A stretch of DNA of 64,000 bases from Lepidodermella squamata (lineage: Eukaryota; Animalia; Gastrotricha), in the NCBI GenBank assembly GCA_047495785.1, contig JBLDXI010000002.1:2232001-2296000 (forward strand), read 5' to 3'. Within the stretch, counting starts at the first letter, position 1. The number at the start of each line of letters is the position of its first letter. The notes beneath the pieces were generated by a model. It was not told the origin of the DNA and did no database searches. It saw nothing but the letters and a program-made list of their open reading frames with translations. Of the stretch, positions 20,601 to 57,055 are shown piece by piece. Position numbers and translations under genes: made by a program.

Positions 20601-21353
20601 GCTTCTGGCGCGGATACAACGTCATTTCGAGCTAAATCAACGTCAATCAACGAGTTGGCGAACCTTCGAAATCCGAGTAACGACACCATCATGCCGCAAT
20701 CTCCGCCAAGTAGCCAGCAGTTGAAGCCGAAAGTTGAGGGCAACAATGGCGTGAAGAAAGCTCACATGTCGGAACCGATAGTTCGAGAGCCGTCGCTGTC
20801 CTACAGCCCGTTCCCCGCCGCCCAAGGATACCGCGAGAAACTGGACGAATCAGCCTCGAAAACTGGAGAAATCGACTCGACGTTCGATTTCGGCGAAATC
20901 TTCATGCTGCAAGTTATCCATACAATCGAATACGTCCTAGGTTTGATCAGCCATACCGCGTCCTATCTCCGTTTATGGGCTCTGAGTCTCGCCCATGCCG
21001 AGCTGTCCGAGACGTTGTGGATGATGGTTTTACGCGTTGGCTTCGTCTACGCTGCTACTGATCCATATTTCGGGTTTATCTACATCACTATCGCATTGTT
21101 GGCCTGGACTGTTCTCACCTTTGCCGTTCTTATCGGAATGGAGAGCATGTCGGCGTTTCTTCACGCTCTTCGTTTGCACTGGTAGGGTGTTTAAATGATG
21201 GCATGGTTTTTTAGGCCAAATTTCTCTGATTTTCGCAGGGTCGAGTTTCAAAGCAAGTTCTACCTAGGCAGTGGCCGCGCTTTTCAGCCGTTTTCTTTCG
21301 AAAACTATCGTCTCCATTCGTCAACCTCTGCGTCAACCACGTCGCTGTCGTGA
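17618..21353 (+). CDS. ATP6V0A: V-type ATPase V0 subunit a, paralog 1
   Basis: MGSIFRS start; [26 protein letters not shown]; [10 protein letters not shown]; [16 protein letters not shown] (essential Arg); [16 protein letters not shown]; 12 short introns. Confidence 0.95.
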
Positions 21354-27173: not shown

Positions 27174-30100
27174 ATGTGCTGCAAAGGTGAAGCAATCGAA
27201 CATGACAGCTTTTATCGTAGTGAAGAAATGTCTTACTGCGAAATATTTCTTCAAACTGAAGTGTAAGTTTGAAAATGGCCTCGAAGTTACAGTTCCAACG
27301 TCTACCTCTTCATAGGGCATACGCTTGCATAGCAGAAATCGGAGAGGCTAATATCACCCAATTTACTGACGTAATCTTTTCGCTCCACCCTAAATTTTTT
27401 GTTTACAAAAATATGCGCCGACAGCAAAACGCGGACGTTACAGCTTACCAACGCACGGTAAATATTTTTTATTCAATTGATGTCGTTTCTTCATTTTTTC
27501 CGTCGTAGTACGTGAAAGAAATCCGAGAGCTGGACGATGCTGAGCGAAATTTGCGTAAATTCTCGTTTTTAATACGAACTTGGGACAATGAATCACTCCA
27601 AAATAGGTGCCCTTGAAACTGAACTGAAAAAGGACAATATCAAGGTTCCACTGGAAGTTGGCAATCCGCCTACACCTATGCCGAAAGAATTGCTAAAATT
27701 GAAGGTTCGCTATAACCTCCGAGTGCGTTAGTCCCAATTAATAAAGCATGTTTCTCCGCAGGAAAAAATCGCCGACGCACTGAAGCAGCTTAACCACATT
27801 CGAACCAGTTCATTAGAGGTTGAAGTGAAACAATTCCTATTGCATCAACGTGGGCTGGTTCTTAAACTCACCGAGTCCTACCTGGCTGATGTAATTCCTT
27901 TCAATGAGGTTGAATACTTTAACTTAGGATGGATCAATTTTATAGAGCTCGTCCCACCACCATATGTCTAATTATTCTGAACCAACTCCAGCACCGAATG
28001 AGCCTCTGCTTTCGGCCCCGCGAACTGAATCGCTGCAAGCATCTGATATCAATCTATCAAGCCAGTTGCATTTCGTCAGCGGGGTGGTACTTCGCGAGAA
28101 GGCTGCTGCCTTGGAGCGAACTCTGTGGCGAGTTGGGCGAGGCCACATTTTGCTGCGAAGTTGGCCGATTGAGGAGGACTTGGAAAATCCTACTACGGTA
28201 AATCCTATTGTCTATTTCGGTTCCAGTAAAAAAAATCTCCTAATTTTCCAGGGCCTTCCGGAGAGATCAAACGCATTCATTGCGATTTTCCAAGGAGAGG
28301 CACTAAGGAATAATCTCTTCAAAGTCTGTGCTGCATTTCATTCGACCATCTTCGCCATCCCAGACACGGCTGAAGAACGAGCAGCGCTTCGGCAAAAGGT
28401 CAACACCCAGCTCGAGGATATGAAAACTGTTCTCAACGAAGCTAACATGCATAAAATGTCGCTTATGGCCGGCGTTGCAAAGGAGCATAGGACTTGGACA
28501 ATCAAAATACGAAAGGCTAAGGCGGTTTACCATGTTTTGAACATGCTCGATCACGACATCACCGATAAATACCTCATCGGAGAATTTTGGTGTCCGACTC
28601 GTGATTTCGAGAAACTTGGCACCGTTCTGGATACGGCTTGTACCAAGGTTCACGGTGATGACCAGATCGGAGTTTCTTACATCGTTCAAATAATGGAGCA
28701 TCAGCCGAAAAAAATTCCGACGTATTTTCGAGTGAATAAGTTCACGAAAGCCTACAACTCGATCGTTAGTGCCTATGGCGTTGCTCGATATCGCGAGGTG
28801 AACCCGGCTTTGTTTACGACTATCACATTCCCGTTTCTATTCGCCATCATGTTCGGAGATATTGGCCACGGAATTATCGTCCTCCTTTTCGGCATGTTTC
28901 TATGCATCAAAGAAAAATCGTTGGCCTTAGTAGCTCAGAAGATAGAGGTAAGAAAACGGGAGCTAGAAAAGCAGCCTTAAAATTTCAATTTTCAGTCCTT
29001 CAAAATGATTTTTGGTGGTCGATACGTTATATTGTTGATGGGAATCTTTTCGATTTATACCGGCCTGATTTACAACGACATTTTCAGCAAGGCTACCAAC
29101 ATTTTCCAATCGCAATGGCATACGAACTTTACGTAATATATTTTTAAGGAATATGGGCCAAGCTAAATAATTGTTCGCTTGCAGATCTGAAGAATTGATT
29201 AAGGAGGACAATATTCAACTCGCCGTAGTTAATAGGACTAGCTTGAATGACTGGCCTTACCCCGTTGGACTGGACCCGGTTTGCTCATTTTTGTCCATAA
29301 TTTTCCCATATTATAGGACATTTTTCAGATTTGGCTAATCTCCGAGAACAAGATTATTTTCATCAATGGCTTTAAAATGAAACTTTCGGTTATTATTGGT
29401 GTCGTTCACATGTTTTTCGGCCTCACACTTTCGCTGATGAATCATATGTAAATCATGCCTGAACTTCAAAAACATGAATAATTGTTGTTCTTGACAGCTA
29501 TTTCAAGCAATGGATTAATATCTTTTTCGAATTTATCCCGCAACTTTTGTTCATGATTTGCATTTTCGGCTACATGGATGCTTTGATCGTTTTCAAATGG
29601 ATCTACTTCAACGCAAATAACGTTGGCGAAGCGCCGTCGATCCTCATCGGACTCATCAACATGTGCCTCTTCAAATACTCTGCTGATACTGCCTCGGAAC
29701 GCTGGATCAACGATAACGTAATTTTGGCTAAATTTCGGATTTTTTCAATAAATATTTTCCGCATTTTAGCTGATGCATATTCAATACGGCCTTGTTGTAG
29801 TCGCGGTTATCAGGTTAAAAATTCATCAAATTTCAATCCATAGTAAATTAATTTTCCTTTAGCATTCCATGGATGTTGTTGTTGAAGCCTTTCTACCTCT
29901 ATTACAAGAATAACAAAGAACAACAACGAAAGATATCGGCACATTTTCGAGATTCAAAGAAAGAAGCCTCGCGTGAGCCGTCAGTCGAGGCAGCGGCGAT
30001 GATCCTGCCGAAACGTATGAGCAACGCTACAACGCGCTCGAGTACAACGGCCGCCCACGACATAGAAACTCGTCATCATCACCATCACCACCATGAAACT

Positions 30101-36500: not shown

Positions 36501-39500
36501 TAAAATTCGGAATTAATTAACAACTTTACCGGATTATTAGCCTGAGAATATTTAATTAGGTCACAAATAAATTTGAATAGAAGTCAGTAAATAAAGTCAT
36601 ACCCTAATTTGTTGCTCAAGCATTTTGGCCATTCGTTTAAGGTGTTTAGCTCTCGCGATTTCAGCATTTAAGGCAGCTCGGACATTATTAGCCGCAACTC
36701 GTCGCCTGCCGAGGAGTCGCTGAGCTTGTTCTGAATCCAACGAAGCTTTCCGCCGGTCAGCTATCAGCGGTTGTAATTGCCGGAAAACCGATGCGTATTT
36801 GTAGACTGACAGTATCCACGCTGTGATTGACCGAGCTGCTTTACTGACGATTTCGGCGATAGGTGGCGTGAAATCCGGGGCATTGACGTAGTTGCCGAGT
36901 CGGTCGAACATTTCGTCGGGAATATCGTTTTTCGGGTAAAATTCGAGCATTTCGAAAAAGTTGACACTTATCAACAGAAGCTTTCCACTCTCCCATCTGA
37001 AAGAAAAAATTTGGAATATTAGAAATTCGAAAAATGACCATATTAAAAGTGCTGATATGAAATTCGAAAAGTAATTAAAAAGCTGTATTATTCCAATTTC
37101 CAGTGGCTCTTGAGATTTTCCAAGGTTAGGCATCGTGGAACATCTGTCACTCTGCCTCACAAATTTTGGCGCGAAACCCACACCCTTACTTATGTTGTTG
37201 TTGTAGATAGAAACATTTCTTTTTAAATATACGAGAAATTCATTAGGTATAGCATCGAATTGACAAGATGCAAGTGCTAGAGGAAACTGACGATGGGCTC
37301 TTGTACAAAATTATGGACAAACGGCATAGAGATGCGGCATTAATAGCCATTTCCAGAGCATTTTGCTCTGAACCAAACGCCGCGGCTGCTGGAGAGGCGG
37401 ATCCCAAAATGAAAGCTAAAGTACACGACTGGGTCGAATACTTCGACCCTTGGATGGATTATTATTCGTCAAACGAGCTGAGTCTAGTGGTGCTTGACCC
37501 CCAAAATTACTATCGCTTAGCTGGCGTTGTGGCTGTTCGGGATTACACCTTTTCTCCGCCTGAATTCGATCATTTGTTCGACTCGAGTAACTCAACGAAA
37601 CCATTGGCCCCGTTCGAAAAATTAATGGAAGCGCTCGAAAGCGAGGCTGAAAAGAAATTCGATACCATGCGAGAAGCTCATAATTCCAACTTGAAAGGAA
37701 TTTTTGCGGACTTCTTCATTTTTGGCACAGATCCTGATTATCGCGGTAGAGGCGTACTAAACAAGTCGATCAAAAAGGTTCTACCGATTTTAAAATCAGC
37801 TGGTTTTAAATACGCAACAATCGGAGCATCAAGCGAGTTTTCTTCAAAAGCGGCCAAATCGTGTAATTTCGACGAGATTGCTTCAATCAACGCAAGGCAG
37901 CTGCTTTGGAGAAATGAAACAATTTTCGAAAAAGTCAAAGAGCCACATGGAATTTGTCGATTTTGGATAAAGGAAATAAAATAACCGATTTTTTTTCATT
38001 TTTATTCGTAAAATAAAACTCACTTTTCGGGTCGGTTGAACAAAACGCACAAAGCGTTGACAATATTGACAATATATTGAGGCGGATCGCGGTATGATCT
38101 AAACTCCTCAACATCCGCCTTATTCAGGTTCTGCAGAGCCGCAACAGCCGCGTCGTATTGCGGGCTGATGATAGCCATTTTCTTGTCCAGCTTATCCTGA
38201 GATTCGTCCTCAATTTTCTTCAACCTGAAAACTTCTTCCTCAGCTTCACGGCACAGCTTTTCAGCCTGGATCAAGTCCTCGCGCAATTTTTCAGCCAGCG
38301 CTTTTGAATTGTGAAAATCATTCCACGCCTTTTCGATCTGAGCTTTCACGCCAGTCATATCAGCCGTCATAGTTTCAGCCACGTGAACGCCGACACGAAG
38401 CCGTTCGAGGGCGGTCTCGTAAAATTTCAACGTTTCCAAATTTTTCGTCCGCATTTCAGCGTACAAGCTCTGGAAAATGTGGACGAAAGACGCAAAACTG
38501 AGGCGAGAAAACGTCCGCTCGAATGCGTTAGACGGCAAAAGCGGCAACTTCGCGGCTAAGAATTCAATAGCTGTCTCGTAGCATTCGACCAAAAACGGCG
38601 GGGTGACTGTGATTGAGGCGACGAGGCTTTCAGGAATTTCATTGGCGGCCATTACGCAATCGACAACTTGCGGCAGACAGTTCGGATCGAGTTGAGAATT
38701 TAACACGTATAAACGGTGTTGGAGTGGTCGGAATAAATTGGCAATATCGGCGTAATATGTGCTGACATTCTCTGCAGCAACTGAAAAATTAGAAAAAAAA
38801 TTAAAATTTTCGAAAATTAACAATAAACTACAAAATATTATTGAACTAAGAATTCACAGCAAATTGAAATAAATGGTTATGAAACCCTCTAACAAAGTTC
38901 ACTCATTACCCTGTAGCTTGTGGCAATCTGAGAGGAAAATGTATCGATTCAAATTTTTTACTAAAAATTCTAATTTTTTCTCAGGTTAAGGCAGATTCCT
39001 TACCTAGAGGCGTTAGACAGAAGACAAATCGGACGTTTTCACGAATTCTCCGATCCAGCCAGTCAACGTTATCTGTAGCTGGGTCGACATGATGAGTCAG
39101 CGAAACAATTTGGTCCCAATCACCCAGAATGCCACTCGTCGATGGGCACATTGCAACAGCGATAGCCAGCTTAAAAATTTCCGCGTCAGACGAGTGTGAC
39201 AATCGTATGACAAATTCGCGCCGCGTCGTTGCCGCGGTCTGGCAAACCGACTTCAACTGCGCCATGGCGTTAGGTAGAGCGATGGATAAATCGACGAATT
39301 CAAAGTTCAAGGCGGCTGAAGCCAACATAACAAGCGGCCGCCAGCCGGGTGCTTGGCGCTGATTGGTTGATGATAGAAGTAACAGCCTTGCATTAGGTCG
39401 ACTTATTATCATCATCAAACGCTCAAGGGTGACTGAAACGTCGTCCGATAATTGGATGAACAGTCGCTCTTGTAATTTTTCCTCCTTTTCGAGCTGCCTT

Positions 39501-42500
39501 AACAAAATATTCAACCGCTTTTTCAACTCAGAATGCGATATAACTCGGTCGCTGTTTTTATCCAGATTTTTCGAGGCTGTTTGGTTCGGCTCAGGGAGTC
39601 GAATATTCGCGAAAAGGAACGAGAGGAACGGCGGTTCTTGAAGGCCGTTCGAAACAACGTGTTCCTCAATTTCAGCATCGGCGGTTAAATTCACGTCATC
39701 AAACGCGTTTGTCGTAGATTTTTCCTTAGAAATCAAACCCGGCCAATGGGATAGCCGGGTTAGGATGCTTTGATTAACGACCTCGGTGAACCAGTCGCTC
39801 GTTTGGGTGACGTAACGCTGGCCGAAGCAAACGACAAGTTCATTCCGCCATAAATGGACAATCGACCGGCGAACGCAGGCGCATCGGTAGTGATCGCTGC
39901 AATCGTTGCTATGAACCGGCTTAGACGACAAGGCTCTGGCCGGGTAGGCGAGAAGGCGGTTGAAAAACATTGATAAATTCGCTGGGGTGAACGAAAACGG
40001 GCTCGGCTGCTGGGAGGCGGCAGTTCGTTGCCGAATTAAATCGAAAATTTCAGCGGTTGATTGGAGTAACAACTCGATTAATTGGCGAACTTTCGGCGCC
40101 TCAACCGCGTACCGCCCAGTGATAGCCGACATGCCCCACTGGATGGTCGGTGAAGCGTAACGCTCGCTTAAAATCGAGGTAGCCGGCGGGGTCGGTAACG
40201 CGATCGGGACAAAATGTCGTAGCAACTCGAACGGCATCGATCTACTCATCGCCGAGTTCCATAGCAGCATCAATTTCGCGAAATTTCGCGGCGAATCTTG
40301 AACACCTGGTAGCCGGTAAGAACTAGCGGCGATGTTGCGTAGCGACCGCACGACCTGCGGCTCATCCGACTCGCCTATCGCGCATAAATCATCGACGGCA
40401 AAGACGAATCGGCGATTTTTGTACGCGGATTTCATTGTTATCAACTTTTCAATGCCGTTCAACATGTGGGAAACAGCGATTCTAGGCGCGATTTTGTAGA
40501 TTTTTAAGATGATATTCGGGTTAGCCGAGGCTAGGCTATGCAGCGACTGGCGAATCGATAGGCCGGGTTCGAATGTGAGTAGTATATTTCCCGCGCATTT
40601 TCCGGCCTCGAGGAAGTCGAGAAGCCAGTAGAACGGCTGGTGGCTCGAATGAACGGTACAACGGGCCAGTCTCGTAAAAACATCCTCGGCAGTCGTGTGG
40701 TTACTAACAGGGTTGAAAATCAGGGGGAAATCCATCGGGTAGGCGCATGACCCAGGGCTCGGAAACGGGGTCAGCCCCACAAAACCATCGGCCCCCATTC
40801 GAAGCGTCAACACATTTAACTGGCTCGACTGAATTCCGTCGGGTAATGCCGAGGAAAATGTAGTTGACTGAAGTTTTCGTAGGGTGAATTCGGCTAATTT
40901 TGGCACGTCTTTGCTTTGAATGCTCTGGAGGAATGTGTGGACAATCGAAAAAACGAGGCACGCTTTGATCCTATCGCGATACCCAGGCAGCAACTGCTCG
41001 AATTTATCGCCTTCAATCGGGCAAATATCGCCGAATTTCGCGAACTGATCCACGAAATTTTCTTTCGGGATTAAATAATCGAAGCAGGTTGATAGGTAGG
41101 TCAAGAAATTCGACGCCTCATGCAGCCGGTAAGACACCGGCTTCGAGCCAGGCGCCGTCCAAGTTTTCGTGCAATGATGGGCTGAAAATTCGGAAATTCC
41201 CTCGAAAATCTCGGCGATATGCATGAACATCCACTCGAGTTCAGCGTCATTAATCAGCCAGCGACTGCTAGCCATATGACGCCAGGGTGTTAATAAGGCC
41301 GTCCAATTAGGCTGGGTGCAATTAATAACGATCAGCGACCCTAACGAGCCAGGGGACATTTGCTCGACAACCGGTTGGGACAGCTCGGCAATCAACCTCA
41401 CGCCCCCTCCCGCTCGCATTTGCAGCCTATCATCGCACCACGCCCGTAAAAATGGTTCAATATCCCCAGATGGGTACATTGCGTCCAGCTTAACCCAAAT
41501 TTGCTGTTGGTTAAGAATTCGTGGGAAACGCTGCCGGATTTCTCGAGCCAGCGTTGTCCCATCTTCCTCGGTGCAGCAGTCGAAAATCGATACAACAGAC
41601 TGGACCCCGGGGGCATAAGCGATGGTATCATCAAATGAACCGGCCGAGTCGGGGGTGACTGCAAATTTTTCATCAGTTGACACAGAATTCGGCGACCTCA
41701 ACGACTCGAGTGTTGTATACAACCCTCCAGCGAGAATTTGCTTCAATTTTTGAATCCTGGTGAAAAGGGTTTGCTCTTCGTTAGGAATAGACACGTCTTG
41801 CAGGACTCGAATGGTTTGTTTTGCTAGGCCAATCGGGTTTCGCATGCCCCAGGGCAGGCCCTTGCCGGGTTTCGCCTGGGTTGAATCGAGGCTAGCAACC
41901 TCCTTCCGCGTGTTCTCAACAACTGCGTTAACAACGGCGGCTAAAACCTGAATTAAGGTGGTTTTGCCAGACCCAGGCGATCCGGTGATAATCACCGGGT
42001 CGTAAGACTGTTTCGAAGCGGAATTTAAGGCTGCGTGAAGTTGGAGAATTTTGGCGATTTGTGAAATCTGGCACTCGAGATGTAGATGTTTCAACGCAGC
42101 TTCGACCTGGTCGACTAAGAACGGGTCGAACCCAAACGCCCCATTCGATGCTGAACCCGTAAAAACGTCTTTGATGATCTCCTTATAAGCCTCTTCATTA
42201 GCTTCACTGCCGAGTCGGCTTGATAAGAGGACGTGAACTGCGCGTAAAACGCAGAGTTCTTCCAAAGCCGCGTCAGTACTCACATCGGCTAATTTCAATT
42301 CATGAAGTCTGCGATTAGCTGAGATTGAAGAGACGATACTAGCGAATCGCCAGCTGTAAAGCAGGCCTCTAGACTCAAACTCTGGCAGTACAGCAGCTAA
42401 GCGTTGAATCACCGCCGCAGTTTTCCGACTCAGATCTTCGGCATTTGTGAACCCAGCCGAGGTCAGATTAACCGCCAAAACTTGTTGCATGTTAATTGCT

Positions 42501-45500
42501 AGGGTTGAGCCGGGTAGAACCAGTTGCCGAAGTGATAATCGAAGCCCGGACGTCACTGGTTTCGAAAACGTACAGAAAATTAAAGGCTGAGGTACGACAT
42601 TGATCGTAGAAGCGAGTAACAATCCATCGAAGTCTATCACCTCATCCGTATCTTGTATAACTGAATCAGCCTCACTCTCCGCGACGATGGAGAGGCGATC
42701 TCTTAAGGAGGCTGAAATCACCTCGGGCCTCAGTAACGAGTTCGATTTTTCACCCAAAAAAGATGGCGGGTTCAATAAATTCGCATTAGCCGAGGCTCGC
42801 CTAGACCTGGAGGGCGAGTTTGATCGGGCCGATTTTCGACCTGACCTAGGCCGGCTGACTGGCAATGGGGTCAACTCAGCCTTCGAAGCCGCTGAGAACA
42901 AATTTGAAATCGATAAGCGAAGATTTGTTAGCAGCGACGATAATTGGCCGTACAACGTGGCTGGTAATGAGTCGACCTCTCGAAACACAACCAACGACCC
43001 TAGGGTGACACTTGTCGCCAAAACGCTTCTAATGCTGTCGTACGTTTTCGGTACGGCACAATCAACGCTGTAAAAAGGCCGACCAGCTAAATTTGCCAAC
43101 GTTCGAATCGAATGAGTCCGGCCTGAAAATAGTTTCCCATCTATCATCGAAAATTGAGTCACATAGCTGGTTTGGACCAGGGTGACTGATAACGCCCTGG
43201 CAAGTTCCGGCGTCAAAAGGGCGGTTGATGACCAGCATTCCGCGCAGATCGGTTCGCATAGATACGGAATAGCCGGGGAAATCCCGCCAGTTTCCAGACT
43301 GATATCCGATATACAGATTTCGCCCTTTTTAACCGGCGTTTTTGCCGTGACTTTGCACGAATGGTACAACCCGGTAAATTCACCCAGGTTCTGGCTGGTC
43401 GACACGAAATCACGCTGGTAAATCAGCTGAGCCATCAAATTTTTCGCCTTTGTAAACTCGGCAGTTTGGCATCGAGTGTCGTTCAAAAACTGCCTGGCGT
43501 AATGATCGATTTCGAGCAAAATGTCTTTCGCTAGATTTCTCGAGCCCGATAACGGCCGGTTGCTTTTACCGGCGAATTTTCGCCCGAAACGCGTCGATTG
43601 CGCGATGGTCAAGCTTTGCGACGAATGCTCAGCGAGAAAATCTTTCGAGAAAAAGCCATTCGACTGCGATTTTTCCAACTCAACGACCGAATTTGAAATA
43701 TCTAGCATGACAGATTTATGAATTTCCTCCTCAATAGTCGCCATCAGAATGTCCGGGCTTGGCGAAACCGGGATGACATTGATGAAGCGGAGTTTCTCGC
43801 CGAAACAAAGCAAAAGTCCGTCGATTAGCGGAACGCTGGTGAATGAAGCGTTCGCATTTTCGTCATCGCTAACAATAAGAAGCCCGGTGACGTGTGGGAA
43901 ACATTTCGCTAGAAACGAGCCAACAATTTTCAGACCAGACGTACTGCCCCCGGCTTGGATATACGCGGTTAACATGACGATTTCCCAGTTCGATAGAGCG
44001 AATAGCCGATTCGATTTAACGCGGAGGAAATCGAAATATTTCCCGAAGTGATCGATAATTACGGTATTAATTTGATCAAAAAGCCGTCGAAACGAGTTAA
44101 CAACAGATTTTTGGTCATCAGCACTCCATGAGAGGAAACGAGGTTTATCGACTATTTTATTGACAATCTTCTGCCATTCGCCAACCGCTGATCGAGTCAT
44201 TTCAGCTAAATCTTCTTCGATGAACAAATTTCGCGTCGCCACATCGACCGAAGCGAGGAAGAACTGGCAAATGAATTGTAAACGCTCAGCCAGCGACATG
44301 AATTCGCTGAAATAGTCCAATTTTTGCATCAAAGGCTGAGCTTTTGCGATACGAATCGTGTCATCGAATGCCAGAACGTTAGAAACGATACTCTGAATTT
44401 CAGCCCGGGATTTTTCGACGGTTAGCCGGAAGCTCTCGAATTCGGCTAGGACATTGAAATCGAGAAATCTAGCGCCGGTACTTTGAACGCGGGCGGCTGA
44501 TGAGGATCGACGTGAGCCCGAGGATTTCCCGCTTCGAAGGGCTGATCTTAGGACTGATGAGCCGATTACGCAGGTCGAGACTTGAATACCGTATTCGTTC
44601 CAGAAATTCGATAAATGGTCGAGTTTTTTGCTCGCAGCGGCTTCAGCCAAAGCCTCGCTGTGAATGGCTTCAAGGCAAAGATTGATCGAATTATCAGCCG
44701 ATGATTCACCCGCTGCGATCCATAACGGCTCCCAGTCAGCTAAGGAATACTCGTCGCAACGCCAGTCGAAGCTCAGCGATAACCGGCCGTACAAACGGCG
44801 GAGAAATTTTTCGGTCATTAGCGGGGTTTGAAGCTTTGCGGCGAAGACCAGTAACCGGCGGCATCTATCCAGGCTTTCGATAAAACGCCGCAAAACTGTG
44901 TCGTCTTGATTCGGCAGTTGTTCCTCGATTTGCAGCGCAACAATATTCCATCCATTAAGCTTATCCTCGATAAGAACCAATGGCAACTGAAATACGGTAA
45001 ATTAAAAAAAATTGAATTTTTTCAAAAAATGATAACTTTTTTGATTGGCAATCGTATCCAATCTTCAATAAGGATTTCGGCTTGGAAGAGGTAGTGCCAC
45101 AATTCCCTGCGGACTTCAATCGCCTTCCTCCAGTCGACGAAGCAAGTCCGTTCAGTGTCTACTGGTGTTACTTTTTCCTCGATGGGTCCGGTTGATTCAG
45201 CGTTCCTCTCGGTAGTCGAAGCGGTGGATGGAGCCATGTTACTTAGGCCCTCTTCGGACATTGAATCGTGGAAAAACCACAACTCTTCAGTCTGGCAGTA
45301 AAACGCGTCGTAGTCTTTGATCATTTGCGCCAGTTTTTCGATCGAATTCTGAGCTTCGGACTCCGCCTCTAAAAATTCGCCCGAAGTAGCCGCTAAGAAT
45401 ATTCGATAGCACGCGTCCCTCAATTCCTATGAAAAATTCCTATATAAATATTAGCCGCCAATATTTTTCAAAAACTTACGTCCAATTTGCTTTTCACAGT

Positions 45501-49713: not shown

Positions 49714-51098
49714 TTATTTCACCTCTGTTATTCCATATTTTTCCGCTACTACATTAATGGAAAAGTTGAACATTTCGTATTGGCAAGGTGCATGTTGATT
49801 ATAGCTATCCATCTCAACGTCTTTCAGGAATATTATGATGAACGTATAGCAAAAATAACCAACAGCTGTTAGAACGGAATACAATATCAAGCCAAATCTG
49901 TTTAGTTTCTCCGCATAGTCTCGTTTTTCGTCATTATGCCAAATGCGTCTGATTGCAGCAGCCGCGATAGTCACGCTTGTGGATAAAAATAACAGATAAA
50001 CGTAAAATATTGCCAATGTCGACAGCTCTGCGCTCGCTGGTATTTGATCGGCAAGCGTGAAAAGAAGAATGAACCAGCTCAGAACTACAGTCAACGCAAC
50101 AGCCACCTTATCTTTCTCTCCAGCTGGCGCTAAAAATGTGCAACCCATCAGGAACGACAACACGATCGTTGGTAGCATGAGTATGACGACATGATATGAA
50201 GATTTCCTTGCCATTCTGAAGTGAAAATATATGTTGGCTAATGAACTTTCTTGTTTGGATTCCCAGCAAACACCGTTGATTGTCCACATCGGATGCTGAG
50301 TCACCGACTCATCCACTAACTCGAATCCCGTGGATATGAAATTGAGTGAGAAATAATTTCTTGTGACTTTGCTGTCATTGGTCAGCCTTAGGAATTCCAA
50401 GTTGTAGTAGAGCGGTGATTTCATCTTCATTAAATATAATAAGGCCTGATATATCTGTCGAGTTCTTTTGCCTAAATACCTGTATCTCGCAAAACTGAGT
50501 GTCAAACGGGAACCATTTAACCTGGATTTGTAAAAAATTGTAGCTTATGTAAGTGATATACATGCCTACATACTTTCATGTGGCAAGAAATAGCCAGGGT
50601 TATTGGAACTCTCCAAATTACGAGACCAGACCTTTCGACGGCGACTGGAAACTTGGAGAGCAGGCTGTATTGATCTGCTCCAGATGCTGCGCCATTTGTG
50701 ATCAGAAAATGTGGAAACCAAATTTCGGCCGCACGTCGAACTCTCAAAGGGCTAAATTTGCAGTCTGTATCGATATAAGACAGCCTTTGATCGGTCCACA
50801 CAATTTCTGGCACCAGAGTTAACCATATTTCACCGGTTGTAGGTTCAACGTTGTTGATAGCATAGATTCTCATGGAAACGAAAACATCAGTTGATGATTG
50901 CGGGGGGCTAGAAACGTACAGTCCGCCAAAGAGTTGCTTGCTCACCTGTTCACATGACTGAAACTAAAATGATACATAATAACCGTATTTCTCAAAATAA
51001 CCGATACTAACCAAATTTGATGCATTTTGATTTGAATAGATTGAGGAAATCTGATTAGCGATGATTACAAGAATTACGGTTTGGAATGAAAAAATCAT
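49714..51098 (-). CDS. Cys-loop ligand-gated ion channel subunit (nAChR-like, no vicinal Cys)
   Basis: Signal exon; WTDQRL; IWFP; Cys-loop CHMKVKWFPFDTQFC (C-x13-C) across an intron; four TM helices; 3 exons. Confidence 0.9.
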
Positions 51099-51526
51099 TT
51101 TTAATTCTCGCCGCGGTGTTGTGCATCACTGATACTCTTATAAAATTGAATATCTCAGATTGAGCTATAGCGCAATATAATTTCCGGCGGTGAGTGCATT
51201 ATCGATCGATTTTCGGAAATCGCTGACTACTTATCTCTTATTGAGGCCATCTCGCTTATCACTGCTTGAATTTCAATTTTTAAATTCCAATCAATTTTCA
51301 TTTCAGAGCCTGGATCTGTAATATTATATTGCTTAAAATAACGATTTTTGCGTTACAGCACTGCCGGATAGAAATGGCGGTAGGATTTGATTTTTGTATT
51401 TACCAACCTGTGTTTGATATTAATTTATCTGTTTGTCTAACAGAACGCCAAGCAAAGAGAAAATAATTTCGGGTACGAAATCACTGGATACACCGAAGCA
51501 GGAGAAGAGTCGATGAGCACAGCAAA

Positions 51527-52124
51527 ATGACTTTGGATGATGATCTCGCAACTGCCAAGCCGAAGTTACACCCTAATTTCCCAGCCTGGCACGCTACTCT
51601 CTCGGAAGAAAATCGTCGGGACTTGGTTGAAAGAATCGCAAAGGTGGGCTTTGAATTCATTTCTATAACTTAATGTCACGGTTCAATCTGAGCAGGATTT
51701 GAAAACATCAAACTCAGAAACAGATGGCCATTTGCACGATCAAGCTGCAGGCATCGAATCAGAAGTGTTTTTGACAGCTTCTTCGCTTCAGCAATACTAT
51801 AGCCTAATTGCTGAGAATGTTCGAAGAGCTCGAAAATCGGATTTCTGCCAAGTTACTAAGCTAATCATCTCTCCGAAGCAAGCGCCAACGGTTATGGATT
51901 CAGGTGAGTCTTTTTTCTTGTTATCATTTCTGTATTTTCATCCTATTGTGACCTGAATAGGGACATCTGTGCCTGTGAAATTAGGCTGTTCCATCTGTCT
52001 AGATGAAATCGCACCGAGCCAAAGCCGGCGCTTGCTGAAGTGCGGTCACGTTTATCACCTGCGATGCATTTCAAGATGGCTTCGCGAAAAGCTTAACTGT
52101 CCTGTATGCAGGTCGATGCCATAA
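51527..52124 (+). CDS. KIX-RING-H2 fusion protein (162 aa)
   Basis: Exons 51527-51643, 51696-51903, 51961-52124. KIX: WHATLSEENRRDLVERIAK...AAGIESEVFLTASSLQQYYSLIAE. RING-H2: CSICLDE-x-CGHVYHLRCISRWL...CPVCR. Confidence 0.8.
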
Positions 52125-53050
52125 AACTAACTGTAAGAGGGATGCGCTAAAAAGACTTCTTTTATGGACACAAAAAAATGTTTGCAGAAACCGTATACCT
52201 TTCAAATAAATGGATTGATGTGCAAAATCTGATGTGAAGATCTTTTATTTCGTGATTTGAGATCGAGTCAAATGACGTGAAACAAAGCGGAACGAGACAC
52301 TTGAATCGGAAGTTGAAACTTCATATGGCTTTGGCCTGAGCCATTTCAGCTATAATGCTTCAATGATGTAGTTTTTTTTGAACAATATCAGCCTATTAGC
52401 CATGCAATGTTTTGAAAACAGTCGAAACTACTCATACACCAAATAACTACAATTTTAAAAGCCGTAATGAAAAATGACATCTTGAAATGGCAATATAAAG
52501 CCCGCTTAACAACATTGCTCAAACATACGAGAATTCGCTTTAACTGCGGCCCCTTGACGCATGTGTATAAAATACAGCACATGTATAAGCATGACATGTG
52601 AAAGGATGAAAAAAATAAATGTCGGTATATATTGGCATGCACTGTGTTTTAGTTGCATTGGTGGTGGTTAGTGGCGCTTTATCATATAGAGAAAGCTAGT
52701 TTAAGCTACAAGAATAGAATGAAAACAGAGTAATAGGAAAGATACTGTCAACAAGCGAAACTTCAAATTTCATAGTATATTCTATGCTATACACGTAATT
52801 TGTTCATGCATGAAAGGTTTTTATTTCACATCGTCATTTTCTTAATAAAATATACCTCTTATATTACGTAGTATTATCATCTTCAAAGCAATATTATAAT
52901 ATTTTCTCATGTAACTATTATTCACTCTTGATAACTCCGCACATACAGAGAGGGAACACAATTATTTCTGCCTTTTTTGCTTTTCCCCATATCTAGACCG
53001 CAAAATGAAATTTAGCCGGAGAGGTTGAGACAATTCTCTCTCACAACATC

Positions 53051-54192
53051 ATGTCAACTGCGTGTAACATTCAGGCAAGCGCAGCGAACAATATTCGGAT
53101 CGCTTTCACATTACAATATTATGGCATGCTTTTATTTACTACAGACCGCAACAAGCCCAGCTATTGCTGCAGTCGCTCCGCCTGCAGCACCTAGTGCCAA
53201 TATTGACAAAAAAGACATGGTGCAACACCAACTGATTCTGCTACTACACGCCTTCAAGTGTTCGAAGCGTTTGAATAGCCACGAGTGCCAACTTCCTTTC
53301 TGCACGACTATGAAGCAGGTGCTGGCGCACATGCAGGACTGTAGAATCGAAAAAGACTGCCCATGTTTGTCTCCTCGTTATACACTCGAGTTTAGATACA
53401 CTCAAATCGGTATTTTTTTATATTTGTTTGCAGACAACCACTGCACCTCGTCGCGGAACATTATCGAACACTATCGAACGTGTAAAAAAGAGGACTGCCC
53501 TTACTGCAAAGATATCAGGCGAGAGAGGCATAAGGATATGTCCCTACCCCTACCCGGATGCAGCCCTTCGTCATCTTCATCGTCAACATCGTCCGAATCT
53601 GCTGATTCTAGCAAATTTTGGCAAAATTGCGAGTGCAATGATCAAATACGCGCTTATATCATCTCAAAAATCGAAAGGGTAATATTTAAAAAAAGTTAAG
53701 GAGGATTTTTTTCAAACTCATTTTCCAGGACATGGAGACATTTTTATCTCAAACCAAATGGTACTCTTCGGTGCACTCCATTGCTGAGCAAATAGAGAAG
53801 GAGAGCTTCGAGACAACCTCGACGAATGAAGACTACTTCTGGGCAATTGCCCAACGCGTTTTCACGTTGAACAGGCAAAGCCGCTCGCAGCTTTTGTCTG
53901 ATAGTAGTAGCAAGTCGGGTAAGGTGAAGAACCGACTCAAGTCACAGAAATCCGGCCTGATTAAAGAGCGACGATCCATCACGGTGGAATGTGTAATATG
54001 CCTCGAAGACTTCCGCCAAAGCCGTCGTCGCAAGCAAACCCTGCCATGCAAACATGTCTTTCACACAACTTGCATCAAGGTTCGTTTTTTTTTCGCACAT
54101 TTTTATGACCCTCGCAATCTGGATCATCTCTGACTCAGAAATGGCTAAGCCGCAGTCCGGCCTGCCCTTTATGTCGAGCTCCTGGTAGCTAA
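53051..54192 (+). CDS. TAZ1-KIX-RING-H2 fusion protein (about 297 aa)
   Basis: Exons 53051-53074 (GC donor; alternative ATG 53121), 53145-53364, 53434-53678, 53729-54079, 54139-54192. TAZ QHQLILLLHAFKC...CPYC with three HCCC sets; KIX-like W...RAYIISKI...AEQIEKESFETTSTNEDYF; RING-H2 CVICLEDF...CKHVFHTTCIKKWL...CPLCR. Confidence 0.85.
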
Positions 54193-54519
54193 GCCGATCA
54201 AGACTTACCAAAAGCTTTACTCTTCGCTCGTTTTTGCTTCATATGATATATTTGTTGGCTGTTTCATAGCTAGCACATCTATTTTTTCCTCGAAGCGGAT
54301 TTGAAGAATTTTCTCTACGCATCACACGCGGTTTAATAATTCTATTCTTTATTCCGTTAAACACCTGTCACGAATGTCTGTGAATATTATATAAGTGAAA
54401 TAAATAATATTTCAGACAATAGCAAATGGGTTTAATACACATACAGCCCACGGCATCAACGAAATAATAATTTTCCCAGCGGAAGGTGATGATTATTTCG
54501 ACCTAATGTGAAAACATAA

Positions 54520-56467
54520 TCACGTGAATTTACCCGGTGTAAATTGCAGTATCTTCTCGCGATGTGTCGCGTAATGAGTTATTATCTCGTTGTAAAATGG
54601 GTTTGTAATGAGCAGCCCGTCATGCGCTGTCGTGTTGTTAGCAAAAATTGCCCTCAGGGCTGATCCGGCCGACGTCAAATTTTTTAACTCTACGTGTAAT
54701 CTGTCGACTCGCTCCTTCACCGCTGATTCAACTAGCGCAGAAATTCCACCGTAGCACTGGTCATAAATTTTAGCGTAGTCACGTGTTATGAAATCTTCGT
54801 AAGCGCTGTAGTAGGTCGCTTGAATTTTTTCGACGATTTCAGGCGAGTCGAGAAGGCTAGACGGTCGGAAGTACAACAAGCCAATCAATAGGCCGTATTC
54901 AACCACGCTAAGGTCAGCTTGTTTAAGGGAGCTTTCTGCGTCACAAAACAAATTTTCGTCCGCCTGGTAAAGATCAAAAAAATTTAATTAAAAATTTAAT
55001 TAAAAAAAAATTGCATACGCACTTACCTGATTTGATTTGAAGTCATCCGTCATGATGAATTTCCTGACCTGTGACTGACGTTTTTCAGAAAAAATGTCGA
55101 ATCGGCTGTTCAACGCGAATTGAGCTAAGCATATTGGGAAAAAAGCGTCGGCGAGCAGGCGTTTTCGATCTTCGAGGCCGACGTTTTTAAATCCAGGTAG
55201 AGCTCGAATGGTGTTAACTACGTGCTTCCCGGTCAATAGAAGATTCCTCCTTAATATTTCAAATTTTTCCGCCGAAGACCTTGCTTCGGAAAGCATTTGA
55301 ACATCCTGAAAATCAGATTCCTCAAATCTGAATAATTTATTTTTATCAAATTACCGATGCGATGTTTTGAAGGATTCTTGTGCAGCGGACGCTTCTCTTT
55401 AAGAATTCTTCGCCAAGATCGGAACTAGGACCATTTTCTTCTTGAATGAATCGCACGAGCAGGTTCAAAGGATCGTCATTTTCCGGGAAATTCATCATAC
55501 CAATGTCTGCTGTTCGGAAATACTGCCCGGCCGTTCCGTAGAGCCAAAAGTGAGGTGCCCTGTAATGAAAAAGACAAAGAATTCAAGCTGGAAAAATACT
55601 GGAAAATACTCACAATTCGCTATTGCTGTCATTCGAGTTATTCACAGCAAATTGGCTTTGGCCATCATCCATCAAGTCGACCTTTTCTTCCTTAGGCTTG
55701 ACATTGAATCCAAAACCTTGTTGACTGGAGAAGAAACTTGACGATGAGGAAGATTCACTCTTCATAGGTGGTAGTTTCCCTCTAATTTTCTCTCTGATGT
55801 AGTAGGAATGGCGGCCACGTCGGAAAGACGTAAGAGACATGCCAATAGCGACACAACGTCGAAAACGGCAATATTTGCACGCAAATTTCCCCGAAGCATG
55901 CGGTTGACATTGCGGCGCGGTATCGGGCAAATCGATCGGGTGCATTACAAGGACCCTCGGCACCTGTTTGATTCTGAAGTTCTTCTCGCATCGATAGATG
56001 TGATCAGACCTCAGTTGAATAGATCTGGCGAAGAAGGACTTACAACTGTCACAGGTTACTGCTCCATAATGGTGGCCACTGCTTGGCCGCGAGCAAACAG
56101 CACAGGGTAGCTGTTTGAAATCGATGGCCTCGCTGTTGGCTTTCGAATTCGAGGGAACGAGAAGGCCTAAAGTTTGGCACTTCTTGAAGCGGCAAGGGCG
56201 GCATATCAACGATTGCAATTGTTTAGATGAGCCTGATGGCGCGAAGCAAAGACAATGGAACTCCGCGTCAGATCTAGCGCCAGATTCGACAATTTTTGAA
56301 TAATGAAGGAACACATTCTGAAAATTGAAATTAAGACCTATATTTTTGGATCTTGTGTGGTTTTTTACCTTGCACGATGAGCAGATCTCAGGTCCGGCTG
56401 AGTTGCTCGGGGGAAATGAAAGAGCTCGCTTTCGTAAGCAAACTTGACAAACAATTTTGTCGTTCAT
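54520..56467 (-). CDS. Nuclear hormone receptor with a degenerate plus a canonical C4 DNA-binding domain and an LBD
   Basis: DBD-like 1: CQVC...CSSCK...CLC...CRPCRFKKCQTLGL. DBD 2: CAVC..SSGHHYGAVTCDSCKSFF...CKYCRFRRCVAIGM. LBD signature IRALPGFKNVGLEDRKRLL; AF-2-like PFYNEII. Confidence 0.9.
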
Positions 56468-57055
56468 TTTGCTCGTCAAAATCGTTAAATGACAGCGCAC
56501 GTGCTTCGCAGAGCGCCTTTTATATGCAGGGCGAGCGTCGCATGAGTCAATCGACACGGGTCGTGTGGAACAATTAATTTTCATCAAACACAGTATGGTG
56601 GCCTGAAAAAGTGTCGCTGACGCAATGATTGTCCCCGACCCTGCCACTACTCAACGTAAAAAGCGGACTTTTTCCAAGACCGAAGCGGGACTTCAAAAAC
56701 ATGGATTCTCGCACCTGACAAATGATTAATTAATTAAATAGATAACGTAATTTTGGCGAACGTCAGTCTCGCCGAGATGTCTCACTGTGTGATAGATGCA
56801 TATACAGATAAATACATATAAATGCAGATAGATTATAGACAGTCGCAATGTTTATCGCATGTCAGCTCGAGTTACAATCTTACGTAACGATTTAGTTAGA
56901 CTGACTTTGTCACTAGCGTGAAATCAATTACAAGCATCATTTATTGTTTCACGTCGACATGTACATGTACTTCAATTAAGGTATTCACAGGTAAATAAAT
57001 TCCTTGTAAATAATCAGCCTGTGTATTTTTTGCTCTATAACTCAAAGTCCTTTCG

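What the first reader, a model, noticed from the sequence alone, without database searches (positions are those of the whole stretch)
51527..54192. Tandem 'coactivator-decoy' E3 ligases: CBP/p300-type KIX and TAZ1-KIX domains fused to RING-H2
Seen: two adjacent same-strand spliced genes encode KIX-RING-H2 (162 aa) and TAZ-KIX-RING-H2 (about 297 aa). All 12 TAZ Zn ligands are present. Both RINGs have C3H2C3 spacing, the E2-contact Trp and the linchpin Arg (CPxCR). An intron sits at the same KIX position in both (RRDLVERIAK|D vs RAYIISKIER|D), marking them as paralogs. No bromo or HAT domain is present. Known: in CBP/p300 the order is also TAZ1 then KIX, and these domains bind activation domains (HIF-1a and CITED2; phospho-CREB, Myb, MLL). 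Inference: the TF-docking part of CBP was exon-shuffled onto a ubiquitin ligase, giving proteins that could capture activated transcription factors and ubiquitinate them instead of co-activating them. I do not recall this architecture being described; plant BTB-TAZ and KIX8/9 proteins are analogous but different.
Basis: partly seen in the sequence, partly recalled or inferred. Interest (0 to 1): 0.88.

Follow-up and report, generated by a model that had tools for sequence, protein, structure and literature searches.

The report
CBP docking domains fused to RING ligases
Two neighbouring, expressed genes of an unidentified invertebrate join the transcription-factor docking domains of the coactivator CBP (KIX alone, or TAZ1 plus KIX) to a ubiquitin-ligase RING finger. 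This points to a ligase that picks its targets by their activation domains, a design I found described in no paper.

Summary
RNA contigs of a public run show all six introns, including a GC..AG first intron in gene 2.

- **Domains:** TAZ is of the TAZ1 type (CBP TAZ1 E 2e-16, TAZ2 about 1e-3) with all 12 zinc ligands. Both RINGs are C3H2C3, closest to RLIM/RNF13. Gene 1's KIX passes Pfam's cut-off. Gene 2's KIX falls just under it, but it is homologous to gene 1's and models as a KIX bundle.
- **Origin:** The TAZ1 intron of gene 2 has the same position and phase as in CBP genes of a sponge, a fish and C. elegans. This supports DNA-level descent from CBP.
- **Constraint:** All 8 variants seen in gene 2 are synonymous.
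- **Function:** Ubiquitination of transcription factors captured by their activation domains is inferred, not shown.
- **Novelty:** No paper describing the architecture was found. Database models show independent look-alikes: TAZ(-KIX) plus an 8-Cys RING in blenny fishes, and RING-TAZ-TAZ in amphioxus. C. elegans cbp-2 is a known RING-less TAZ1-KIX mini-CBP.
- **Earlier scan notes:** The scan noted a third member, unverified, about 70 kb before the window's start.

Verdict: a new variant of a known kind.

The parts
51527..52124 (+). Gene 1, KIX-RING-H2, 162 aa. Exons 51527-51643, 51696-51903, 51961-52124. The cDNA 3' end lies near 52220.
   Evidence: Splice joints in RNA contigs and a SMART-oligo loose end at 52220. 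Translation.
51575..51842 (+). Gene 1 KIX domain (about residues 17-88), interrupted by the phase-0 intron 51644-51695.
   Evidence: Pfam KIX_2 32.8 bits, above the cut-off. CBP-KIX HMM 35.6 bits. AF2 model with pLDDT 82.9 whose top 8 PDB matches are CBP/p300 KIX.
51987..52112 (+). Gene 1 RING-H2 (C3H2C3, Trp, CPVCR).
   Evidence: zf-RING_2 56.2 bits. Best solved relatives are RLIM (E 4e-11), RNF13 and EL5. Motif found by regular expression.
53051..54192 (+). Gene 2, TAZ1-KIX-RING-H2, 297 aa. Exons 53051-53074, 53145-53364, 53434-53678, 53729-54079, 54139-54192. The first intron is GC..AG.
   Evidence: All four joints appear in RNA contigs. Translation.
53220..53507 (+). Gene 2 TAZ1 zinc finger (three HCCC sites), interrupted by the phase-1 intron 53365-53433.
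   Evidence: zf-TAZ 49.1 bits. CBP/p300 TAZ1 chains at E 2e-16 to 7e-15, against TAZ2 at about 1e-3. Ligands listed. Intron position and phase identical to CBP genes.
53598..53878 (+). Gene 2 KIX domain (about residues 137-213), interrupted by the phase-0 intron 53679-53728.
   Evidence: Pfam KIX 25.0 bits, E 2.3e-5, with KIX_2 and Med15_N also hit. CBP-KIX HMM 24.6 bits. AF2 model with pLDDT 84.7 whose best PDB matches are all KIX domains.
53990..54174 (+). Gene 2 RING-H2 (C3H2C3, Trp, CPLCR), interrupted by the intron 54080-54138.
   Evidence: zf-RING_11 41.4 bits and zf-RING_2 33.1 bits on the first half. Full motif in the spliced protein.
53567..53971 (+). Eight single-base variants in gene 2 coding sequence, all synonymous. 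Five are heterozygous in both RNA and DNA (53567, 53585, 53588, 53609, 53627). Three are fixed differences in the RNA run (53929, 53962, 53971).
   Evidence: Variants, codon effects. About 21% of random changes would be synonymous, so P is about 4e-6 (1.6e-4 if all were transitions).

Best explanation
These are two functional, tandemly duplicated genes for small single-chain RING-H2 ubiquitin ligases. Their only other folded modules are the activation-domain docking domains of the coactivator CBP/p300: KIX in gene 1, and TAZ1 followed by KIX in gene 2.

Shown:
- The gene structures and their expression.
- The domain identities.
- Paralogy of the two genes after the KIX-RING fusion.
- Descent of the TAZ1 part from a CBP gene at the DNA level, through a retained intron.
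- Absence of bromodomain and HAT domains.
- Purifying selection on gene 2.

Inferred: TAZ1 and KIX act as the substrate-recruiting part and bind the disordered activation domains of transcription factors that normally dock on CBP. The C-terminal RING, of the RLIM/RNF13/Arkadia kind that works as a monomer or dimer with UbcH5-type E2 enzymes, then transfers ubiquitin to the captured factor.

The logic is that of MDM2 on p53: bind and mask the activation domain, then ubiquitinate. The reader modules, however, are borrowed from the coactivator itself. The likely net effect is to shorten the life or change the activity of activators in competition with CBP.
For: - **Splicing and expression:** all six joints appear in RNA contigs only, at depth about 12-27 (gene 1) and 56-111 (gene 2).
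- **Domains:**. KIX fold models have pLDDT 83-85 and match only KIX structures at the top.
- **Fusion not dependent on one splice model:** exon 53434-53678 holds the TAZ1 end, the linker and KIX helix 1. Exon 53729-54079 holds KIX helices 2-3, the linker and the first half of the RING.
- **Paralogy:** collinear homology through KIX, linker and RING, E 4e-17, with a shared phase-0 KIX intron.
- **CBP origin:** the TAZ1 intron is phase 1 in the codon after C-x and two residues before HC(A/T)SSR. The same holds in Amphimedon, a blenny fish and C. elegans cbp-2.
- **Constraint:** 8 of 8 variants are synonymous.
- **E2-binding features:** the Trp and CPxCR are present.
- **KIX groove:** the residues of the pKID/c-Myb groove are largely kept in the alignments. 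W591, R600, L603, Y649/Y650, A654 and I657 equivalents are kept, and K662 becomes K or R. CBP numbering is from my own knowledge.
- **Recurrence:** independent TAZ/KIX-plus-RING fusions in blennies and amphioxus suggest that the combination is useful.
Against: - No binding or ligase activity was tested.
- Gene 2's KIX is below Pfam's curated cut-off (25.0 against 27).
- The KIX models were guided by CBP KIX rows in the alignment, so the fold match is partly circular.
- The phosphoserine-contacting Tyr (CBP Y658) is Arg in gene 1 and Phe in gene 2. The helix 1-2 loop that forms part of the MLL site is 6 residues shorter in gene 1. The ligand range may therefore differ from CBP's.
- No ortholog was found in any other organism, so long-term conservation cannot be judged.
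- The whole spliced proteins were never folded or searched as one piece.
Confidence: 0.55

Rival explanations
1. They are competitive mini-CBPs. The TAZ1 and KIX modules sequester activation domains away from full-length CBP, as proposed for HAT-less CBP paralogs. The RING serves mainly to ubiquitinate the protein itself, keeping the inhibitor short-lived and tunable. Bound factors are not its targets.
For: RING-less TAZ1-KIX and TAZ1-only paralogs (C. elegans cbp-2 and cbp-3) exist, and their knock-down changes promoter activity although they have no HAT domain. Short multi-TAZ or TAZ-KIX proteins occur in many invertebrates.
Against: A complete RING-H2 that looks able to bind an E2 has been kept in both old paralogs, which share only 29% identity. 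It was reportedly kept in a third member as well. That is more than self-turnover would seem to need. RINGs of this type usually modify bound partners too.
Confidence: 0.2
2. They are ligases recruited by transcription factors but acting on something else. DNA-bound activators recruit the proteins through TAZ1 and KIX. The RING then ubiquitinates neighbouring chromatin or cofactor proteins (histones, CBP itself, Mediator), so the proteins act as co-regulators and not as degraders of the factor.
For: The domain logic is the same as in the best explanation. CBP's docking domains normally serve recruitment to promoters. Gene 2 has a basic linker (K/R-rich, residues about 226-247) that could act as a nuclear localisation signal or a DNA/chromatin contact (sequence).
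Against: There is no histone-, DNA- or nucleosome-binding domain. The proteins are very small, so the nearest lysines would be on the bound factor.
Confidence: 0.17
3. They are young chimeric genes without a selected function, that is, expressed by-products of a lineage-wide scrambling of CBP pieces.
For: No ortholog was found elsewhere. Unverified scan notes report many degenerate CBP-derived domains in this genome.
Against: The reading frames are intact. All zinc ligands are present. 8 of 8 variants are synonymous. The two paralogs have diverged to 29% identity yet keep both domains. Both are transcribed and correctly spliced.
Confidence: 0.05

Closest known systems
CBP/p300 N-terminal region (TAZ1 then KIX)
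   Same: It has the same two domains in the same order. The TAZ is TAZ1-type (E 2e-16 to CBP TAZ1 structures). The TAZ1 intron has the same position and phase. The KIX core residues are kept.
   Different: There is no bromodomain, CBP-type RING/PHD, HAT, ZZ, TAZ2 or IBiD. The TAZ1-KIX linker is only about 30 residues. A canonical C-terminal RING-H2 has been added, which is unrelated to CBP's own atypical RING (PF06001).
C. elegans cbp-2 (NP_499201, TAZ1-KIX, 322 aa) and cbp-3, and similar mini-CBPs of Meloidogyne and Heterodera
   Same: These are partial duplicates of the CBP 5' region that keep only docking domains. They are expressed and affect promoters without a HAT domain. They share the TAZ1 intron.
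   Different: They have no RING, so they cannot recruit an E2. They are independent duplications in another lineage.
MDM2 (p53 activation-domain binder plus C-terminal RING)
   Same: The functional logic is the same: an N-terminal domain grips an amphipathic activation-domain helix, and a C-terminal RING ubiquitinates the bound factor (established knowledge).
   Different: The binder fold is different (SWIB/MDM2 domain against KIX and TAZ1), and there is no homology. MDM2's RING is C2H2C4 and acts as a dimer.
Plant BTB-TAZ (BT) proteins and rice KIX-F-box proteins
   Same: A TAZ or KIX docking domain is placed in a ubiquitin-ligase context. KIX in rice F-box proteins is cited in KIXBASE (PMC5668377). 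BT proteins are from my own knowledge.
   Different: Those are substrate adaptors of multi-subunit cullin ligases (BTB or F-box), not single-chain RING ligases. They are plant lineages. TAZ and KIX are never together there.
Blenny-fish 'p300-like' / 'CREB-binding protein-like' models (Salarias fasciatus, Ophioblennius macclurei) and Branchiostoma XP_066300612
   Same: TAZ (with or without KIX) and a RING-type domain lie in one predicted protein. This appears to be convergent invention of the same combination.
   Different: The blenny RING is an 8-Cys variant from an unrelated gene family that also exists without TAZ/KIX. The amphioxus RING is N-terminal C3HC4 with two TAZ domains and no KIX. 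All are automatic models with no study behind them.
RLIM/RNF12, RNF13, Arkadia, RNF38 (C-terminal RING-H2 ligases)
   Same: These are the closest solved RING relatives (E 4e-11 to 1e-7). They have the same C3H2C3 spacing, Trp and terminal CPxCR.
   Different: Their substrate-binding regions are unrelated to KIX or TAZ.

Membership tests
KIX domain (Pfam PF02172 / PF16987) | Profile score at or above the curated cut-off | tested here: inconclusive
   Gene 1 passes KIX_2 (32.8 against 25.6) but not KIX (18.7 against 27). Gene 2 is just under both (25.0 against 27, and 20.2 against 25.6; E 2.3e-5). A CBP-KIX HMM gives E 9e-9 and 2.4e-5 at Z = 20000.
KIX domain (Pfam PF02172 / PF16987) | Three-helix bundle fold | tested here: met
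   AF2 models have pLDDT 82.9 and 84.7 with three long helices. The top Foldseek PDB matches are CBP/p300, RECQL5 and Gal11 KIX at TM 0.6-0.77. Caveat: the alignments that guided the models contained CBP KIX rows.
KIX domain (Pfam PF02172 / PF16987) | Binding of activation-domain peptides | not testable with these tools
   Only residue conservation could be inspected.
TAZ1 zinc finger of CBP/p300 | zf-TAZ profile above the cut-off and three HCCC zinc sites | tested here: met
   49.1 bits against 25. H43 C47 C56 C61, H70 C74 C80 C85 and H94 C98 C103 C106 are present.
TAZ1 zinc finger of CBP/p300 | Closer to TAZ1 than to TAZ2 | tested here: met
   TAZ1 chains score E 2e-16 to 7e-15. TAZ2 chains score 8e-4 or weaker.
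TAZ1 zinc finger of CBP/p300 | Gene-structure mark of CBP descent | tested here: met
   The phase-1 intron is at the identical codon in Amphimedon, a blenny fish and C. elegans cbp-2.
RING-H2 E3 ubiquitin ligases | C3H2C3 ligand pattern and RING profile above the cut-off | tested here: met
   Gene 1 scores zf-RING_2 56.2 bits. The first half of gene 2's RING scores 33.1 and 41.4 bits. The full pattern is present in both spliced proteins.
RING-H2 E3 ubiquitin ligases | E2-contact Trp and terminal basic 'linchpin' residue | tested here: met
   RWL/KWL and CPVCR/CPLCR are read directly from the sequence. Their roles come from established knowledge of RNF4/RNF38-type RINGs.
RING-H2 E3 ubiquitin ligases | Ubiquitin transfer with an E2 | not testable with these tools
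   This needs an in vitro assay.
CBP/p300 (KAT3) coactivators | Bromodomain and KAT11 acetyltransferase core | tested here: not met
   No such Pfam hit appears on any exon. The proteins are 162 and 297 aa long. They are derivatives of CBP, not members of the family.
Truncated mini-CBP paralogs (cbp-2 type) | Only the N-terminal docking domains and no catalytic module | tested here: not met
   Gene 2 has TAZ1-KIX like cbp-2 but adds a RING-H2. None of the 150 best TAZ relatives has a RING-H2.

The most novel reading that the evidence does not exclude
Fusing a coactivator's activation-domain reader (TAZ1 and/or KIX) to a RING may be a recurrent natural invention. It appears in this invertebrate family (two members here and reportedly a third with a pseudokinase domain), in blenny fishes and in amphioxus. 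If so, it defines a class of 'activation-domain-directed' ubiquitin ligases that compete with CBP for the same motifs. That would physically couple activator potency to turnover. It would be a natural counterpart of engineered binder-E3 degraders, and a direct handle on the old observation that activation domains and degrons overlap.
Probability: 0.3. Interest if true: 0.8.

Novelty: new variant of a known kind. Interest (0 to 1): 0.62.

Why it matters
Activation domains are short, disordered and hard to recognise. CBP's TAZ1 and KIX are among the few folded domains known to read many of them. A ligase that uses exactly these readers would mark for ubiquitination the same set of factors that CBP activates. 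That gives a simple built-in antagonist or timer of transcriptional activation.

It would also offer a compact natural scaffold (162 aa for gene 1) for studying how activation-domain binding is coupled to ubiquitination. The apparent independent origin of similar fusions in fishes and amphioxus makes the idea testable by comparison. All of this rests on activities that have not yet been measured.

Tried and rejected
- **Word-indexed protein searches:** searches with the stop-free TAZ stretch and with the KIX-RING exon gave nothing. The genome's own proteome and close orthologs are therefore not in that collection.
- **Exhaustive HMMER search:** the search with TAZ1-linker-KIX helix 1 returned 696 relatives, of which only 150 are listed. 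None of those 150 has a RING-H2. The unlisted 546 were not seen.
- **Metagenome scan:** the scan with the KIX-RING exon found only RING-only matches.
- **ESM Atlas:** it gave only generic RING clusters.
- **Rfam:** there was no hit in the window.
- **Further family members in the window:** tblastn found none.
- **Organism identity:** it could not be established. Run labels are coded, and the Atlas taxa for a V-ATPase exon were uninformative. Short 50-70 nt introns, about 42% GC, and the neighbouring Cys-loop receptor and two-DBD nuclear receptor genes indicate an invertebrate animal.
- **Pseudogene or mis-splicing:** rejected on the RNA joints and the synonymous-only variation.
- **'Not a KIX, just any helical bundle':** rejected, because three KIX-clan profiles and only KIX structures match.
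- **Shared KIX intron as a CBP mark:** rejected, because it lies 7 nt from the ancestral site, and the second ancestral KIX intron is absent.
- **Whole spliced proteins:** they have no reference, and I did not type them in. Only the two KIX domains of about 79 aa were typed. Whole-protein folding and full-length searches were therefore left out.
Full report
**Observation.** I rebuilt both genes from the sequence.
- Gene 1 has three exons (51527-51643, 51696-51903, 51961-52124) and encodes 162 aa.
- Gene 2 has five exons (53051-53074, 53145-53364, 53434-53678, 53729-54079, 54139-54192) and encodes 297 aa.

A public RNA run (X1) and a DNA run (X2) hold this stretch. When both were laid on 51300-54500, the RNA contigs showed a joint at every predicted intron and the DNA contigs showed none. 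The first intron of gene 2 is reported as 53071 to 53142 with a 3-letter ambiguity. A SMART-oligo loose end at 52220 marks the 3' end of the gene 1 cDNA, just after an AATAAA. Word depths are about 12-27 for gene 1 and 56-111 for gene 2.

**Domains.**
- **TAZ:** Exon by exon, Pfam gives zf-TAZ for gene 2. The stop-free read-through scores 49.1 bits, and the two exon pieces score 39.2 and 19.8 bits, against a cut-off of 25. Against solved structures, the TAZ matches CBP/p300 TAZ1 chains at E 2e-16 to 7e-15. TAZ2 chains reach only 8e-4 or weaker, so it is TAZ1. All twelve zinc ligands are present with CBP-like spacing, apart from a 4-residue shorter first loop.
- **RING:** Both genes have a RING (gene 1 zf-RING_2 56.2 bits; first half of gene 2 at 33-41 bits). 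Both RINGs fit C3H2C3 and have the Trp and a terminal CPxCR. The gene 1 RING is closest to RLIM, RNF13, EL5, RNF126, RNF38 and Arkadia.
- **KIX:** The KIX domain is split by an intron, so half-domains score weakly. Even so, the only PDB sequences they touch are CBP KIX. Gene 2 reaches 25.0 bits on KIX (cut-off 27, E 2.3e-5) and also hits KIX_2 and the Med15 KIX.
- **KIX, further tests:** An HMM I built from 14 CBP-type KIX domains scores the full proteins at 35.6 and 24.6 bits. AlphaFold models of both KIX domains are confident (pLDDT 82.9 and 84.7) three-helix bundles. Their best PDB matches are exclusively KIX domains. These models were guided by CBP rows in the alignment, so they show compatibility rather than independent proof.
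- **Absent domains:** No bromodomain or HAT is present.

**Relationship of the two genes.** The proteins align collinearly through KIX, linker and RING (29% identity over 147 aa, E 4e-17). They share a phase-0 intron at the aligned K39|D40 and R163|D164. They are therefore old tandem paralogs that diverged after KIX and RING had been joined. The RING-side introns differ: gene 1 has one before the RING, and gene 2 has one inside it.

In gene 2 the fusion does not hang on any single splice. One exon carries the TAZ1 end, the Ser-rich linker and KIX helix 1. The next carries KIX helices 2-3, a basic linker and the first half of the RING.

**Origin.** I fetched three CBP-derived genes and mapped their introns. 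In a sponge (Amphimedon), a blenny fish and C. elegans cbp-2, the TAZ1 domain is interrupted by a phase-1 intron. It lies in the codon that follows C-x and precedes (A/P)HCASSR. Gene 2 has its phase-1 intron in exactly that codon (DCP-Y-NHCTSSR). This is good evidence that the TAZ1 part descends from a CBP gene by DNA-level duplication and not by retroposition or convergence.

The KIX intron does not give the same evidence. The ancestral site (phase 2 in the Leu of HKL^VQAIFP, in sponge and fish) lies 7 nt upstream of the site used here. The second ancestral KIX intron is absent.

**Constraint.** Five heterozygous sites (seen in both RNA and DNA at about 1:1) and three fixed differences in the RNA run fall in gene 2 coding sequence. 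All eight are synonymous. Only about 21% of random changes would be synonymous (34% of transitions), so P is about 4e-6 to 1.6e-4. Gene 1 showed no variants.

**Relatives elsewhere.**
- Word-based searches found nothing.
- The exhaustive search with the TAZ1 region found 696 relatives, with the best at 114 bits and 47% identity.
- The top hits are short multi-TAZ or TAZ-KIX proteins from a bryozoan, a spider, a tick, a leafhopper, a mussel and cyst and root-knot nematodes, together with C. elegans cbp-2.
- HAT-less mini-CBPs are therefore common. For C. elegans they are documented as partial duplications whose knock-down changes promoter activity (PMC10320766).
- None of the 150 listed hits has a RING-H2.

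Two cases are convergent look-alikes.
- **Blenny fishes:** They have several 'p300-like' / 'CREB-binding protein-like' models. In these, TAZ and KIX are followed by a conserved 8-Cys domain whose profile matches TRIM37, RBBP6 and other RINGs. That C-terminal domain also exists alone in other fish proteins, so this is a separate fusion.
- **Amphioxus:** It has a C3HC4 RING followed by two TAZ domains.

Five literature searches found no description of a KIX- or TAZ1-RING ligase. KIXBASE mentions KIX in rice F-box proteins.

**Same genome.** Unverified scan notes report three further features:
- a 'pseudokinase-TAZ1-KIX-RING-H2' gene about 70 kb before the window's start;
- expansions of stand-alone, degenerate CBP HAT domains;
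- C2H2 proteins fused to such HAT domains.

I could not read those stretches. If the notes are right, the two genes here belong to a larger family in a lineage that has taken CBP apart and reused the pieces.

**Mechanism.**
- **Shown:** two expressed, constrained genes that combine CBP-derived docking domains with a canonical RING-H2.
- **Inferred:** TAZ1 and KIX recruit activation domains, and the RING ubiquitinates what is bound. This is the logic of MDM2 on p53.

In the alignments, the hydrophobic pKID/c-Myb groove of KIX is largely kept. The phosphoserine-contacting Tyr is Arg in gene 1 and Phe in gene 2, and K662 becomes K or R. The loop forming part of the MLL site is shortened in gene 1 (CBP numbering from my own knowledge). 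The range of partners may therefore differ from CBP's.

The rival readings are a self-limiting competitive decoy, a factor-recruited ligase acting on chromatin or cofactors, and a functionless chimera. The last is made unlikely by the evidence of selection.

**Verdict.** The function is plausible but untested. This is a new variant of known kinds (RING-H2 ligases, mini-CBPs), with a recurrent-fusion angle that raises its interest.

Noticed in passing
P0042, P0139, P0046, P0158 (loci L030; alignment A2): Blenny fishes (Ophioblennius macclurei, Salarias fasciatus) have a small family of compact genes in which CBP-type TAZ and KIX domains are followed by a conserved 8-Cys RING-type domain. The same C-terminal domain occurs without TAZ/KIX in Salarias LOC115402855 and Alosa LOC143116552. 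This is an apparently independent TAZ-KIX-RING fusion.
   Followed up: partly
P0114 / P0151 (Branchiostoma lanceolatum XP_066300612 and isoform): An uncharacterised amphioxus protein has an N-terminal C3HC4 RING and two TAZ domains.
   Followed up: partly
window 53567-53627: Five heterozygous synonymous sites lie within 61 bases of the Ser-rich linker of gene 2. They appear at about 1:1 in both the 2015 RNA run and the 2024 DNA run, while the rest of the 3.2 kb has almost none. The same two haplotypes are present under two organism labels. This could reflect a clonal line, a balanced pair of alleles or a gene-conversion tract.
   Followed up: partly
window 52252-52477: RNA contigs show 'opposite strands' joints (52252/52361 and 52363/52477), and DNA word depth doubles at 52370-52476, downstream of the gene 1 poly(A) site. 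No inverted repeat was found in 52100-53060.
   Followed up: partly
window 38981-44986 (-): There is a 2001-aa open reading frame without introns. It has only a weak match to the dynein AAA_6 ATP-binding region and generic AAA profiles.
   Followed up: no
window 20211-21182 and 27964-28977 (+): There are two V-ATPase a-subunit pieces. The earlier one matches the C-terminal end of the profile (682-795) and the later one matches the middle (152-422). This suggests two tandem genes and not one.
   Followed up: no
window 49714-50945 (-) and 54520-56647 (-): The flanking genes are a Cys-loop ligand-gated channel (LBD 56.5 bits, a weak TM region) and a nuclear receptor whose zf-C4 profile matches in two stretches, as an earlier scan note says.
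   Followed up: partly
L029, L030, L031: The phase-1 intron inside TAZ1 (before HCASSR) is conserved from sponge to fish to nematode. It is a handy mark for recognising CBP-derived TAZ1 copies.
   Followed up: yes
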